Assembly (NCBI GenBank): GCA_036785375.1
Contig: JAWMAR010000353.1
Span: 2,418,001 to 2,482,000, forward strand
Reading direction: 5' to 3'
DNA: 64,000 nucleotides
From: Leucoraja ocellata
Taxonomy: Eukaryota
This document shows positions 51,060 to 53,517 of this stretch, piece by piece. A program made the translations under genes and the position numbers. Numbering within the stretch: position 1 is the stretch's first letter; each line of letters begins with the position of its first letter. Under the pieces are notes generated by a model that saw nothing but the letters and a program-made list of their open reading frames with translations, was not told the DNA's origin and searched no databases.

Positions 51060-51490
51060 GGTGTGTCGTTAAAGAATCACCAAAACAGGAGAGTCGACAA
51101 AGAAGTCAGTGGATGTTATTTACTTGGATTATCAGAAGGATTTTGATAATGTGCCACACGCGAGGCTGCTAAACAGGATTGGAGCTCCTAGTATTTGAAG
51201 CAAGGTTCCAGCATGGATAGTAGATTGGTTGACGGGCAGATTCAACGAGTGAGAATAAAGGGGGGACATTTCTGGTTGGCTGCTGGTGAATAGTGGTGTT
51301 CCATGGGGGTTGGTGTAGGGGCTTCATGTGTTAATGGTCTGGATGGGAGAATTGGTGACTTTGTGGACAAATTTGCAGACGGGATGAAAAGAGGTGGAGG
51401 GGGCAGTTGTGTAGAGGAAGCATGGAGGCTGCAGAATGACGTGGACAGGTTGGGAGAGTGGGCAAAGAAGTGGAAAATGGAATACAGCGG
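51060..51490 (+). mobile_element. Old CR1 RT fragment
   Basis: VDVIYLDYQKDFDNVPH, KFADGMK, LQNDVDRLGEWA. Confidence 0.8.
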
Positions 51491-51643
51491 GTTGTTGTGT
51501 TTGACTGAGAGTTCACAATCTAAAATATTCGTTCCCCGCCACTCCCTGGTACTGATAAGGACAAGCGCAGTGAACTGGGCGGCACGGTGGCGCAACGGCA
51601 AAGCTGCTGCCTTCTTCTTCTTGCGAATGGCATGCACAGCCTA

Positions 51644-51871
51644 ATGTCCCTGTCCCACTTAGGAAACCTGAACGGAAACCTCTGGAGACTTTGCGCCCCA
51701 CCCAAGGTTTCCGTGCGGTTCCCGGGGGGTTTTGTCAGTCACCCTACCTGCTTCCACTACCTGCAACCTCCGGCAGCCAACTGCAACCTCCGGGAACCGC
51801 ACGGAAACCTTGAGTGGGGCGCAAAGTCTCCAGAGGTTTCCGTTCAGATCTCCTAAGTGGGACAGGGGCAT
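51644..51871. mobile_element. Palindromic MITE, ~80-bp inverted arms, TA target duplication
   Basis: TA-ATGTCCCTGTCCCACTTAGG...CCTAAGTGGGACAGGGGCAT-TA. Confidence 0.9.
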
Positions 51872-51928
51872 TAAAGTTGTAGGACAACTAGTTCTATTTG
51901 ATCTTATTTGATTGTGCACGCCGGAGTC

Positions 51929-51981
51929 ATTGCATTGGTCGAAACAGGGCGGACCACGTGAAGATTGCAATCTCCCACCCC
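51929..51981 (-). ncRNA. HDV-like self-cleaving ribozyme fold (minimal)
   Basis: P1 GGGGUGG/CCGCCCU with G1.U wobble, P2 AUUGCA/UGCAAU, P3 AUC/GGU, L3 UUCACGU, short UUCG P4, J4/2 CCAA. Confidence 0.8.
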
Positions 51982-53517
51982 AGTTGCTGCCTCACAGAGA
52001 CCCGGGTTCGATCCTGACTACGGGTGTTGTTTGTACGAAGTTTGTACGTTCTCCCCGCGACCGCGTGTGGTTTCTCCGAGTGCTCCGGTATTTTCCCACA
52101 ATCCAAAGACGTGCAGGTTTGTAGATAATTGGCATCATGAAAATGTGTAAATTCTCCCTAGTCTGCAGGGTCGTGCTGGTGTACACGGTGATCTCTGGTC
52201 GTCGCGGACATGGTGGGCTGAAGGGGCCGTTTCCATGCTGTATCTCGAAAGTACAATCTAAAGTCTCTCCATTGGGCACGTGGTGTATGGAAGTAACTGA
52301 ATTATTTTATTTTCATATTAATGATATTTGGAAACTCTCCGGGAATATTCTTTATGCCCTATAACATCACAGTGTCAAACAATGTAAATGCCCCCATTCG
52401 CTGTGGAAAGTATTCCCCGGACACTGTGGGAGCAACGTTCATGATTGCAACAACCACTTCAGTCCACGTACAGATCTTGTGTATGAGAGATATTACATAA
52501 TCTTGTGTTAGAAAGTTCCTCTACTAGTCCTACTGTTCCCGCCTACATTCTATCTGTGTCCCATCCCCTCCCTCGACATCAGTCTGAAGAAAGGTCTCGA
52601 CCATAAACGTCACCTATTCCTTCTCTCCATAGATGCTACCTGTCCCGCTGAGTTACTCCAGCATTTTGTGTCTATCTTCCACTGACCGATCTTCCCCACA
52701 CATTGACCGTCACCTTCCCCTCAGCTCCCCTGCTGTACCACCTGAAGCCACTCTGGGAATGTCCTCACTCGGCTTCTGTCAACAAGAATCCACAGTGTCC
52801 AGGCCGTGCCCTTGTCTCACTGCTAACGTCGGGTAGGACGTGTAGAAGACTGAATTCCCACACCGTCAGGTTCAAATACAGCTTCAACCCCACAACTATC
52901 AGGTTCTTGAACCGACCCGCACACCCATAGTCCCACCTCAGTATTTACAGAACCATATCACCAGAGGACTATGGTCCAATATAAATACTGAGGAAGCGCA
53001 TCGAACAAATTAACGATTGGACGTGCCGAAACTTTCTTCAATGAAACGAAGACAAAAGGGTGGAAATTGTTTGTATAAAGCACTGAATGATCTAGGGCCA
53101 AAATACATCTCTGATTTTCTGCTACAAGGTTGACGAGTTCCCGCTCAGACTCTCCTGTGCTGGGGATGAGTGGGAAATAGAGGCCAAAAATGTCGGGTCC
53201 ACATCGGATAAAACAGGGGGAGAGAGAAACAGGAGCTAATGAGAGAGCAGAGACCCGGGAGATATTGTTCACTCTTTATTCCTCTGGACAATATCATCTC
53301 ACCCCGTGAATATTTTTTATTGTCCCGGCATCTTTTGACTTCAGAAATATTTTCTGTCCTTTGACAGGTTTGATGATGGGTGACTGAAGAAATTCCCGGG
53401 AGAAGATTTGTCCCAGACCTGGCCCCCTTGACGGGAGACTCAAGGAGCAGATTGTAAAGGGAGCCGGGATCCCGGTGCGGAGCCTGGAGTCCTTTGGCCA
53501 CCGGTTGCCCTTGGCCA

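What the first reader, a model, noticed from the sequence alone, without database searches (positions are those of the whole stretch)
51613..51981. Ribozyme-headed mini-retroposon: a ~139-nt element starting exactly at a minimal HDV-like ribozyme
Seen: once the nested MITE is removed, a ~139-nt minus-strand insert remains, with an (AAG)n tail and an 11-bp TSD (one mismatch). Its first 53 nt read GGGGUGG GAG AUUGCA AUC UUCACGU GGU CCGCCCU GU UUCGA CCAA UGCAAU. This gives the HDV nested double pseudoknot: a 7-bp P1 opened by a G1.U wobble, 6-bp P2, 3-bp P3, L3 matching UYCNCGY, a single-pair P1.1 as in the CPEB3 ribozyme, a vestigial P4 and a C-N-A-A J4/2. The predicted cleavage site (5' of G1, position 51981) coincides to the base with the TSD boundary. 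Established: R2, RTE and L1Tc/Ingi-type non-LTR elements use 5' HDV-like ribozymes. Inference: this is a SINE-like family with no Pol III head that frees its 5' end by self-cleavage from host transcripts and is mobilised by an Ingi/Vingi- or RTE-type LINE. If abundant, it would scatter ribozymes across a cartilaginous-fish genome.
Basis: partly seen in the sequence, partly recalled or inferred. Interest (0 to 1): 0.92.

Follow-up and report, generated by a model that had tools for sequence, protein, structure and literature searches.

The report
Mini-retroposon headed by HDV-like ribozyme
A 139-base jumping element, present in very many copies in this genome and in runs under two other organism labels, begins exactly with a 53-base sequence that fits the hepatitis-delta-type self-cutting RNA fold, and RNAs in a public library start at that same base, so it probably cuts itself free from host transcripts, though cutting has not been shown.

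Summary
A 369-bp insert (51613-51981, element on the minus strand) with an 11-bp target duplication interrupts a tRNA-type SINE. A nested 230-bp MITE splits a 139-nt element that ends in (AAG)n.

Its first 53 nt fit the HDV double pseudoknot. A broad descriptor hits only this base in the whole window, against about 1.75e-6 hits per position by chance. Rfam support is far below threshold (11.1 bits, cut-off 44).

Public runs show a high-copy family under three organism labels:
- MITE-less copies exist.
- All 12 listed contig pieces end at 51980-51982.
- The head is as deep as the body.
- In one oligo-dT RNA library, 499 reads stop at 51981 and continue into the template-switch primer, so RNAs begin at G1.

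The family majority improves the fold: P3 becomes fully Watson-Crick and J4/2 becomes C-G-A-A. The one hypervariable head site is the N of C-N-A-A.

The same core occurs in LINE heads and in tRNA-adjacent theta-type ribozymes from metagenome contigs.

Self-cleavage itself, family-wide covariation and the LINE partner remain untested. The scan noted this family before on other DNA of this genome (128 notes, one follow-up).

Verdict: a probable ribozyme-headed non-autonomous retroposon, a new variant of a known kind.

The parts
51982..51992 (.). Target-site duplication, copy at the element's 5' side (AGTTGCTGCCT on the + strand)
   Evidence: Direct repeat D3. Other copies of the host SINE have it once.
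51929..51981 (-). 53-nt head that can be drawn as a minimal, P4-less HDV-like ribozyme. Predicted cleavage is 5' of G1 (51981).
   Evidence: Only descriptor hit in the window. Weak full-length alignment to Rfam RF02682 in the same register (11.1 bits, E=4). Template-switch primer joined at 51981 in 499 RNA reads.
51975..51981 (-). P1 5' strand (nt 1-7, GGGGUGG)
   Evidence: Pairs with 51946-51952. Duplex energy -11.3 kcal/mol. Present in the MFE fold.
51972..51974 (-). J1/2 (nt 8-10). nt 8 is polymorphic in the family: G>A in 15% of DNA depth and about 43-46% of RNA reads.
   Evidence: table 3, place 51974.
51966..51971 (-). P2 5' strand (nt 11-16, AUUGCA)
   Evidence: Six Watson-Crick pairs with 51929-51934, -4.5 kcal/mol.
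51963..51965 (-). P3 5' strand (nt 17-19, AUC here; ACC in about 98% of family depth)
   Evidence: table 3, place 51964. The majority form makes P3 fully Watson-Crick with GGU.
51956..51962 (-). L3 (nt 20-26, UUCACGU), with U20, C22, A23 and G25 at the same numbered positions as reported for the CPEB3 ribozyme
   Evidence: Passages of PMC4836649. The same heptamer is in 121 core occurrences in metagenome loci.
51953..51955 (-). P3 3' strand (nt 27-29, GGU)
51946..51952 (-). P1 3' strand (nt 30-36, CCGCCCU)
51939..51945 (-). G37-U38 (P1.1 partner of C22; U38 opposite U21), then the 5-nt linker UUCGA that stands in place of P4
   Evidence: tRNA-adjacent comparators L027 and L045 have a 6-nt U-rich linker at the same place.
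51935..51938 (-). J4/2 (nt 44-47, CCAA here). C44 is the predicted catalytic cytosine. nt 45 is hypervariable in the family: G 52%, U 31%, A 15%, C under 1% of X1 depth.
   Evidence: table 3, place 51937.
51929..51934 (-). P2 3' strand (nt 48-53, UGCAAU)
51872..51928 (-). Linker and 5' half of the body. The linker (nt 54-61) is variable, with small indels in the family.
   Evidence: tables 3 and 4 (places 51921-51928, 51906, 51910).
51642..51871 (.). Nested MITE (230 bp counted with one copy of its duplicated TA). It is a later insertion, absent from other copies of the family.
   Evidence: Inverted repeat I1. Joint 51641>51872 in reads and contigs.
51613..51641 (-). 3' end of the element. It holds the 3' strand of a long body hairpin and the (AAG)n tail (51613-51622).
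   Evidence: body fold, GGCGUGCACA pairs with UGUGCAUGCC. loose-end consensus before 51872 in X1, X3 and X24.
51602..51612 (.). Target-site duplication, copy at the element's 3' side (AGCTGCTGCCT on the + strand)
51577..52245 (+). Host tRNA-type SINE copy that the element interrupted. The 3' limit is approximate.
   Evidence: Depth jumps at 51577. Similarity to two other copies in the window.

Best explanation
This is one old copy, later hit by a MITE, of a high-copy non-autonomous non-LTR retroposon of about 139 nt. The element has three parts: a 53-nt minimal HDV-like ribozyme, a body that folds into one long hairpin, and a short 3' end with an (AAG)n tail.

Proposed cycle. A copy lying in any Pol II transcript is transcribed passively. 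The head folds into the nested double pseudoknot (P1, P2, P3, one-pair P1.1, no P4) and cuts the RNA 5' of G1. The released RNA starts exactly at the element's first base. A LINE reverse transcriptase that recognises the 3' hairpin and tail copies it by target-primed reverse transcription, which gives full-length copies with target duplications of about 11 bp.

Shown here: the insert and its duplication; the family; the shared 5' end in listed copies; RNAs that start at G1; the fit to the fold.

Inferred: the cleavage itself, passive transcription, and the LINE partner.
For: 1. The insert with its TSD starts exactly at G1.

2. A broad HDV-like descriptor hits only 51981 (minus) in 128,000 positions. 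The null rate is 35 per 20 million positions with a loose L3 rule and 0 with the strict rule.

3. The Rfam HDV-F-prausnitzii model aligns end to end from G1 in the same P1/P3 register, though at only 11.1 bits.

4. Family evidence. Summed word depth in the head is 0.6-2.0 million in X1, against 754 in the flank bin 51560-51576. The family is present in X3 and X12, which carry other organism labels. Head depth is at least equal to body depth, so there is no 5' truncation gradient. All 12 of 12 listed element pieces end at 51980-51982. The MITE-less joint is seen in 256 RNA reads and 22 contigs.

5. RNA 5' ends. 499 reads of X24 fit up to 51981 and then carry loose letters with median length 25. 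The first 22 letters of their consensus are the reverse complement of the SMART template-switch primer, ending in its GGG. That primer string occurs in 104 papers together with 'template switching' (listing only). Mean depth in that bin is 601+680.

6. Variants shown in the head fall where the model allows them. nt 8 lies in J1/2. nt 45 is the N of C-N-A-A. nt 18 is C in 98% of family depth, which turns the U.G of P3 into C-G.

7. The same core (C-UUCACGU-GG, then P1 strand ending CCCU, then G) marks real ribozymes elsewhere. In 83 of 100 distinct metagenome contexts all three unconstrained P1 pairs form, with 14 P1 types, against about 6% by chance. These include a LINE family with an RT ORF and three matches that directly abut tRNA genes.

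8. P4-less HDV-like ribozymes of 56 nt cleave in vitro, and C-to-U at the catalytic site kills them (PMC10879173, section 8 passages).
Against: - No cleavage has been shown.
- Rfam gives nothing at E<=10 in the 1-kb scan. In the 81-nt scan it gives only 11.1 bits against a cut-off of 44. The CPEB3 and HDV models do not appear at all.
- The nested MFE of the head is ordinary: -12.4 kcal/mol, z +0.58, and 148 of 200 shuffles fold at least as well.
- P3 in this copy is weak (+1.7 kcal/mol as a bare duplex). P1.1 has one canonical pair and there is no P4.
- I wrote my descriptor after seeing the sequence. The published descriptors sit in figures and supplements I could not read.
- Only 40 of 161 variant rows were printed, so conservation of the other head positions, including C44, is not established.
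- Table 6 lists no place where many molecules begin.
- Agreement of the loose-end consensus is 0.43, so only part of the 499 reads carry the primer.
- The library is unstranded and is a single run.
- A 5' end at G1 is also what a transcription start would give.
- No partner LINE was found.
Confidence: 0.72

Rival explanations
1. The head is an internal promoter (Pol III or Pol II) and G1 is a transcription start. On this reading the HDV-like drawing is incidental, or serves only as RNA structure.
For: RNAs starting at G1 fit a start site as well as a cut. Weak box-like matches exist: A-box-like 6 of 9 specified bases at nt 5, and B-box-like 6 of 9 at nt 37 (consensus strings recalled). The L1Tc Pr77 head is both promoter and ribozyme (PMC3383444, abstract), so the two roles need not exclude each other.
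Against: No tRNA, 5S, 7SL or snRNA similarity: Rfam at E<=10 and ARAGORN. Matches of 6 of 9 are what chance gives in 139 nt, and the B-like box lies too close to the 5' end for a tRNA-type promoter (established knowledge). The reads come from an oligo-dT library, while the element ends in (AAG)n and not in poly(A). That fits 3' cleavage products of polyadenylated host transcripts better than short Pol III RNAs (inference). The rival also does not explain the descriptor fit at 1.75e-6 per position.
Confidence: 0.13
2. The head is a relic or a purely structural module. It descends from a LINE's 5' ribozyme, or folds like one, but no longer cleaves. It would be kept for binding the LINE protein or for protecting the 5' end, and the defined 5' end would come from another processing step.
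For: In R2 the protein binds a pseudoknot within the 5' ribozyme region independently of cleavage (PMC6765202, section 11 passage). P3 and P1.1 are weak and P4 is missing here. Rfam scores are far below threshold.
Against: The family majority keeps C at the catalytic position's neighbour context as C-G-A-A, and keeps a fully paired P3. P4-less ribozymes of this size are active. An exact RNA end at the predicted scissile bond is most simply explained by cleavage.
Confidence: 0.1
3. This is a 5'-truncated tail of a LINE that happens to start where a chance HDV-like drawing is possible.
For: Most short retroposed inserts are 5'-truncated LINE or SINE copies (established knowledge). The descriptor was written after the fact.
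Against: 12 of 12 listed pieces from three runs end at 51980-51982. Head depth is not lower than body depth. RNA ends lie at G1. The chance rate of the descriptor at a given base is about 1.75e-6.
Confidence: 0.03

Closest known systems
5' HDV-like ribozymes of non-LTR retrotransposons (R2, RTE, L1Tc/ingi, R1, R4, LOA)
   Same: The ribozyme is the first nucleotides of the element. Cleavage 5' of G1 frees the element RNA from a co-transcript. The P3-L3-P3' core is of the same kind: R2's conserved CCUCCUCGUGG (PMC5035012 passage) against CC-UUCACGU-GG in this family's majority form. A LINE family with this very core and an RT ORF was fetched here (L091 and many others).
   Different: Those heads carry a P4 and often large insertions (about 184 nt in R2, 77 nt in L1Tc; PMC6765202 passages). 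This one is 53 nt with no P4, and the element has no ORF.
Non-autonomous derivatives that keep the LINE's ribozyme end: R2 SIDEs, NARTc, 'bipartite nonautonomous LINEs' of RTE, Ingi and R2
   Same: A short element made of a LINE-type 5' end with a ribozyme plus a LINE-type 3' end, mobilised in trans (PMC3414825 abstract; PMC5786205 passage).
   Different: The parent LINE is not identified here, so derivation by internal deletion is not shown. The element is much shorter (139 nt) and very abundant. Those described in the papers I read are from insects and trypanosomatids, and from RTE families that the quoted passage does not name.
Minimal HDV-like and theta ribozymes of gut phages (Riccitelli 2014, recalled; PMC10879173)
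   Same: About 50-56 nt, P4 replaced by a short linker, same L3 core. Three such matches directly after tRNA genes were fetched here: L027, L038 and L045.
   Different: Those sit at tRNA 3' ends in phage genomes. The authors report about 99% of them in Caudoviricetes, and the eukaryote genomes they searched were human, mouse and protists (section 7). This one heads a retroposon in an animal genome.
Mammalian CPEB3 ribozyme
   Same: Same numbered core positions (U20, C22, A23, G25). P1.1 is made of one G-C plus a U-U. J4/2 is 4 nt beginning C-G in the family majority (PMC4836649 passages).
   Different: CPEB3 has a P4 hairpin and is a single intronic locus. The Rfam CPEB3 model gives no match here even at E<=10.
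Hammerhead-bearing SINE-like elements of Schistosoma, and retrozymes
   Same: Short non-autonomous retroelements that carry a self-cleaving ribozyme (PMC6765202 passages).
   Different: A different ribozyme class. Those have a Pol III promoter ahead of the ribozyme, or LTRs and a circular RNA stage.

Membership tests
HDV-like (delta-like) self-cleaving ribozymes | Nested double pseudoknot: 7-bp P1 starting at the cleavage site with a G1.U wobble, P2 crossing it, and 3-bp P3 inside P1 | tested here: met
   All pairs form as drawn. It is the only descriptor hit in the window.
HDV-like (delta-like) self-cleaving ribozymes | Catalytic cytosine opening a C-N-R-A type J4/2, and a P1.1 pair between L3 and the base after P1 | tested here: met
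   C44-C45-A46-A47 in this copy; C-G-A-A in the family majority. C22 pairs with G37. Conservation of C44 across copies was not visible in the printed rows.
HDV-like (delta-like) self-cleaving ribozymes | L3 with U and G placed for the reverse wobble that holds the catalytic metal | tested here: met
   U20 and G25 are present. Their role is taken from PMC4836649 passages.
HDV-like (delta-like) self-cleaving ribozymes | Score at or above the gathering threshold of an Rfam HDV-type model | tested here: not met
   Best is RF02682 at 11.1 bits against 44, E=4 in an 81-nt scan. Nothing at E<=10 in the 1-kb scan. These models include a P4 and cannot score P2.
HDV-like (delta-like) self-cleaving ribozymes | Covariation that keeps P1, P2 and P3 across homologues | tested here: inconclusive
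   No copy sequences of this family could be fetched. Only per-site variant rows were available, 40 of 161 printed. One change, nt 18 U/C, keeps its pair. In unrelated lineages that share the core, P1 covaries: 14 types, 83 of 100 contexts.
HDV-like (delta-like) self-cleaving ribozymes | Mg-dependent self-scission 5' of G1, lost on C-to-U at the catalytic site | not testable with these tools
   Indirect only: RNAs with a 5' end at G1.
CPEB3 ribozyme (Rfam RF00622) | Match to the family model, a P4 hairpin, and location in the CPEB3 intron | tested here: not met
   No match at E<=10. No P4. The element is dispersed and high-copy.
Theta ribozymes | Minimal P4-less HDV-like fold | tested here: met
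   5-nt linker between G37-U38 and C44. Comparable with L027 and L045.
Theta ribozymes | Cleavage site within a few nt of a tRNA 3' end in a phage genome | tested here: not met
   No tRNA in 51400-52300. The upstream sequence is the target site inside a SINE.
SINE in the strict sense | Head derived from tRNA, 5S, 7SL or snRNA, with an internal Pol III promoter | tested here: not met
   Rfam and ARAGORN are negative. A and B box matches are 6 of 9 each.
Bipartite non-autonomous LINE / SIDE-like element | 5' end and 3' end shared with an autonomous LINE of the same genome | not testable with these tools
   There is no such LINE in the window, and the genome is not searchable here. An earlier-notes query found none.
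Non-LTR retroposon (target-primed reverse transcription) | Target-site duplication, a simple-repeat or A-rich 3' tail, and many dispersed copies with different flanks | tested here: met
   11-bp TSD. The (AAG)n tail is present here and in the family consensus, and the flanks differ between copies: share that runs on unlike is 0.98 in X24, and contigs continue unlike beyond 51982.

The most novel reading that the evidence does not exclude
A vertebrate genome may carry thousands of catalytically competent 53-nt P4-less HDV-like ribozymes, spread by a head-only retroposon that needs no promoter of its own. Every copy in an intron or UTR would then be a potential self-cutting site in a host transcript. 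Its CPEB3-like core would make retroposon capture a testable origin for the mammalian CPEB3 ribozyme. It would also extend minimal delta-like ribozymes, so far reported almost only from phages, to animals.
Probability: 0.4. Interest if true: 0.9.

Novelty: new variant of a known kind. Interest (0 to 1): 0.74.

Why it matters
Ribozyme-headed LINEs and their short derivatives are known from insects, trypanosomes and a few other groups. Minimal P4-less HDV-like ribozymes are known from phages and metagenomes. Here the two come together in an animal genome, as a very abundant 139-nt element that consists of little more than the ribozyme and a reverse-transcriptase handle.

If the head cuts, three things follow:
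- It is a simple solution to the promoter problem of retroposons: use any host transcript and cut yourself out.
- It seeds host genes with many cleavage sites.
- Its many natural variants form a large mutational data set on the smallest HDV-like fold.

It also makes the origin of the CPEB3 ribozyme directly testable by comparison.

Tried and rejected
1. Rfam at the curated level and at E<=10 gave only hairpin-type chance matches to the MITE in the 1-kb scan. In the 81-nt scan it gave one sub-threshold HDV model match. I do not count this as support for membership, only for the register.

2. Plain MFE folding of the head is uninformative: z +0.58. Pseudoknots are not modelled.

3. BLAST of the insert against the window found no second copy of the element and no LINE sharing head or tail.

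4. An exact scan of metagenome contigs for the family's own core found 0 matches. I used them only as comparators. I did not build a covariance model from them, because they were selected with letters of this very sequence and the test would be circular.

5. My stricter parser recovered the full descriptor in only 43 of 121 core occurrences. I therefore report the simpler P1 test instead.

6. Five GC-rich loci (L030, L064, L066, L084, L085) are chance matches in what looks like coding sequence. L030 shares 21 further letters with the head, which I judge to be coincidence.

7. Words searches of the scan's earlier notes for a LINE partner or for covariation returned nothing.

8. Literature. Searches found no paper in the held library that describes an HDV-like ribozyme-headed retroposon in cartilaginous fishes. 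One search ('HDV-like' plus 'shark') gave 2 papers, and neither is on this (passages read). Webb & Luptak 2011 and Ruminski 2011 are not held. Their content is cited only through other papers' passages. Supplements are closed, so the published RNArobo and theta descriptors were not seen.

9. I did not try to date this insertion. No listed contig spans the stretch.

10. Organism labels were coded and I did not pursue them.
Full report
**What is there.** The stretch 51613-51981 is an insertion into a tRNA-type SINE that lies on the plus strand from about 51577. The 11-nt strings at 51602-51612 and 51982-51992 differ by one letter. Two other copies of that SINE in the window carry the string once, at the matching place. 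On the minus strand the 5' duplicate is followed at once by GGGG, while the uninterrupted SINE copies continue differently. The insert therefore starts exactly at 51981.

Inside the insert lies a hairpin-type MITE with 87-nt arms, 94% complementary. Reads and contigs from other copies of the outer element skip it, joining 51641 to 51872: 113+143 RNA reads, and 8, 10 and 4 contigs in three runs.

**The fold.** Numbering from G1 = 51981:
- P1 is nt 1-7 with 30-36, 7 bp, with G1.U36 and U5.G32 wobbles.
- J1/2 is nt 8-10.
- P2 is nt 11-16 with 48-53, 6 Watson-Crick pairs.
- P3 is nt 17-19 with 27-29.
- L3 is nt 20-26, UUCACGU.
- G37 can pair with C22 (P1.1), with U38 opposite U21.
- Five nt (39-43) stand where P4 would be.
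- J4/2 is C44-C45-A46-A47.

Bare duplex energies are -11.3 (P1), -4.5 (P2) and +1.7 (P3) kcal/mol. The nested MFE contains P1 but is not better than shuffles: z +0.58, and 148 of 200 shuffles fold at least as well. That says little, because the program cannot model the pseudoknots.

**Chance.** I wrote a deliberately broad descriptor:
- P1 7 bp
- J1/2 0-12 nt
- P2 5-8 bp
- P3 3 bp
- L3 7-8 nt
- G after P1
- 3-60 nt in place of P4
- C-N-R-A, then the P2 partner

It hits one start position on the two strands of the window, 51981 on the minus strand. This holds whether L3 must read U-Y-C-N(1-2)-C-G-Y or must only have C at its third place. In 20 million positions of first-order Markov sequence with the window's composition, the loose form hit 35 times (1.75e-6 per position, about 0.2 expected per window) and the strict form hit 0 times.

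The descriptor was written after I had seen the sequence, which weakens the figure. The published descriptors are in figures and supplements I could not read. As outside calibration, the RNArobo paper's table reports 7 hits of an HDV descriptor with loose P4 in about 98 Mb scanned, and it states that only five nucleotides of about 50 are conserved in this fold (PMC4870747, passages).

**Rfam.** In a 1-kb scan at E<=10 only the MITE gave matches: hairpin-like and below threshold. The score was only 11.1 bits (gathering 44, E=4). The HDV and CPEB3 models did not appear. By Rfam's standard this is not a member. The models expect a P4 and cannot score P2.

**It is a family.** I laid two DNA-type contig sets, one contig set of unrecorded type, and one raw RNA run on 51560-52060 at 80% likeness (runs; results).
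- Summed word depth over the head and body is 0.6-2.0 million in X1, 0.3-1.0 million in X3 and 0.3-1.5 million in X12. It is 754, 362 and 336 in the flank bin 51560-51576. The tool warns that this is not a copy number.
- X3 and X12 carry other organism labels than X1.
- Depth over the head is not lower than over the body, and in X12 it is higher. There is therefore no 5' truncation gradient.
- All 12 listed pieces that lie on the element's 5' part end at 51980-51982. Several contigs run on beyond that with unlike sequence. The list keeps the longest pieces, so shorter truncated copies cannot be excluded.
- Letters that other copies carry before 51872 give a consensus in X1, X3 and X24 (agreement about 0.8) that matches 51613-51641, including the tail. 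The (AAG)n end is therefore a family feature.

**RNA ends.** In X24 (oligo-dT, paired, raw reads, about 5% of the run read) mean depth over the element is about 600-980 per mate direction, against 6-8 in the flank bin. At 51981, 499 reads fit up to that base and then carry loose letters of median length 25. Other loose ends in the same run have medians of 53-65.

The first 22 letters of their consensus are the reverse complement of the 3' part of the SMART template-switch primer, including its terminal GGG. I recalled the primer, then found the string in 104 papers together with 'template switching' (search listing only). On the minus strand this reads primer-GGG followed by the element's GGGG.

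A switch at a true RNA end adds the primer's three G to the four of the element, as seen. Premature 'strand invasion' at the G run would share them and leave no extra C in the loose part (inference from how template switching works). RNAs whose first base is G1 therefore exist in vivo.

Limits of this evidence:
- Agreement of the consensus is 0.43, so only part of the 499 reads carry the primer.
- It is one run.
- The library is unstranded.
- Table 6 of the same call lists no place where many molecules simply begin.
- I could not compare with other positions, because 1514 loose-end rows were not printed.

**Variation.** Of 161 variant rows, 40 were printed. In the head these are:
- 51974 (nt 8, J1/2): G>A, 15% of X1 depth and 43-46% of RNA reads.
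- 51964 (nt 18, P3): this copy has U and 98% of the family has C. The majority P3 is A-U, C-G, C-G, and this copy keeps the pair as a wobble.
- 51937 (nt 45): G 52%, U 31%, A 15%, and this copy's C under 1% in X1. The majority J4/2 is C-G-A-A, and the one hypervariable site is the N of C-N-A-A.

Just 3' of the head (nt 54-61) the family shows several substitutions and small indels. No indel row falls inside the head among those printed. This is compatible with conservation but does not prove it.

**Comparators.** An exact scan of metagenome contigs for the family's own 22-nt core found nothing. None is this family. They do show what this core usually is:
- Most belong to one repeat family whose copies have unrelated upstream flanks up to the first G. 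After that comes a canonical HDV-like ribozyme with a P4 hairpin.
- One long locus, L091, has an RVT_1 ORF 2 kb downstream (E 3.5e-24). Its nearest solved relative is L1 ORF2p (2e-15).
- Three matches begin at or within 2 nt of the 3' end of a tRNA gene: L027, L038 and L045. That is the definition of theta ribozymes. L027 and L045 have a 6-nt U-rich linker instead of P4, much like the one here.
- Across 100 distinct contexts, the three P1 pairs that the motif leaves free all form in 83, with 14 different P1 types. Chance would give about 6%.
- The contexts that fail include five GC-rich chance matches. This head passes the test.

The theta paper shows Mg-dependent self-scission of four such RNAs (one product is 56 nt) and loss of activity on C-to-U (PMC10879173, section 8 passages). 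It reports that about 99% of minimal delta-like ribozymes were in Caudoviricetes, and that the eukaryote genomes searched were human, mouse and protists (section 7, read whole).

**Likeness to CPEB3.** Passages of PMC4836649 give the following for CPEB3: U20, C22 (P1.1), A23, a G25.U20 wobble, P1.1 made of one G-C and a U-U, and a 4-nt J4/2 with C57 followed by G58. The head here has U20, C22, A23 and G25 at the same numbers. It has G37-C22 with U38 opposite U21, and C-G-A-A in the family majority. This is a resemblance of the core, not membership: there is no P4, no Rfam match, and the element is dispersed.

**Rest of the element.** Without the MITE, nt 60-69 pair with a stretch near the 3' end to close a long hairpin of about 60 nt, followed by a short single strand and (AAG)n. 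The family's majority letter at 51632 turns a G.U of that stem in this copy into G-C. I take this as the likely handle for a LINE reverse transcriptase (inference by analogy with stringent LINE/SINE pairs).

**Mechanism and rivals.**
- Best reading (0.72): a promoter-less, non-autonomous retroposon that is transcribed within host RNAs, cuts itself out 5' of G1 with a minimal HDV-like ribozyme, and is copied by a LINE enzyme.
- Rival 1 (0.13): G1 is a transcription start. There is no small-RNA similarity and only 6-of-9 box matches. The reads alone cannot exclude it.
- Rival 2 (0.10): a structural relic that no longer cuts.
- Rival 3 (0.03): a truncated LINE tail with a chance fold. This is contradicted by the shared ends, the flat depth and the RNA ends.

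**Known or new.** Six LINE clades are reported to carry 5' ribozymes, and RTE, Ingi and R2 give short 'bipartite' derivatives that keep the LINE's 5' end (PMC5786205 passage). SIDEs and NARTc are worked examples (abstracts; review passages). The kind is therefore known.

The combination appears to be new: a P4-less 53-nt head, a 139-nt element, very high copy number, and an animal genome. My searches of the held library found no description of it. These were; the two papers holding both 'HDV-like' and 'shark' are unrelated. Subscription papers and supplements were not searchable.

The scan itself has noted this family on other DNA of the same genome: 128 notes hold the words, and one follow-up (s1-884617) reached a similar but more cautious verdict.

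**This copy.** It is an old, dead copy for transposition, because it is split by a MITE. Its head differs from the majority at nt 18 and nt 45, plus the linker, so it is not the best template for an assay. The majority form is.

Noticed in passing
window 51642-51871: The nested MITE is itself a very high-copy family, with summed word depth up to 7.3 million in X1. It has a low RNA share compared with the retroposon and the SINE. It gives sub-threshold hairpin matches to miRNA models (MIR820, 95.9 bits against 196).
   Followed up: partly
window 51577-52245: The host is a tRNA-type SINE and the deepest repeat in the stretch. At 51994 this copy lacks 4-6 letters that other copies carry: four listed inserts there (CAGCGC in 289 of 659 RNA reads), and most loose ends at 51995 continue with the SINE consensus.
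   Followed up: partly
L001-L119 (for example L091 505-3589, L003, L009, L036): A LINE family in a few metagenome data sets starts with a canonical HDV-like ribozyme: P1 GGGGAGG, a P4 hairpin, and C-U/C-A-A. Upstream flanks are unrelated from copy to copy. L091 has an RVT_1 ORF, with L1 ORF2p as its nearest solved relative. The host organism is unknown.
   Followed up: partly
L004 637-714 (-), L099 140-220 (+): Two ribozyme heads lie in tandem, the first cut short after P1. Several other loci (L013, L069, L089, L116) have a partial head just upstream of a full one. This looks like template jumps or incomplete cleavage products that were reverse transcribed.
   Followed up: no
L027 751-787 (+), L038 483-520 (-), L045 1335-1373 (-): P4-less HDV-like matches begin at or next to the 3' end of tRNA genes (Thr, Leu, Pro) inside tRNA clusters. 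This is the arrangement described for theta ribozymes of phages.
   Followed up: partly
L018, L025, L035, L049, L050, L054, L068, L076, L095, L105, L118: A further group shares the same core with P1 GGGGCCA or GGGGGCA. It is preceded by long G-rich runs and followed by GU(U/G)AGUAG-like letters and AT-rich sequence. What these elements are is unexplained.
   Followed up: no
L030 60-110 (-): A GC-rich contig, apparently bacterial coding sequence, shares 21 letters with the retroposon head beyond the search motif. Only 1 of the 3 free P1 pairs forms. I judge it a coincidence.
   Followed up: partly
window 51974 (nt 8 of the head): The A variant makes up 15% of DNA depth but 43-46% of RNA reads. 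One subfamily may therefore be transcribed, or survive as RNA, more than the others.
   Followed up: no
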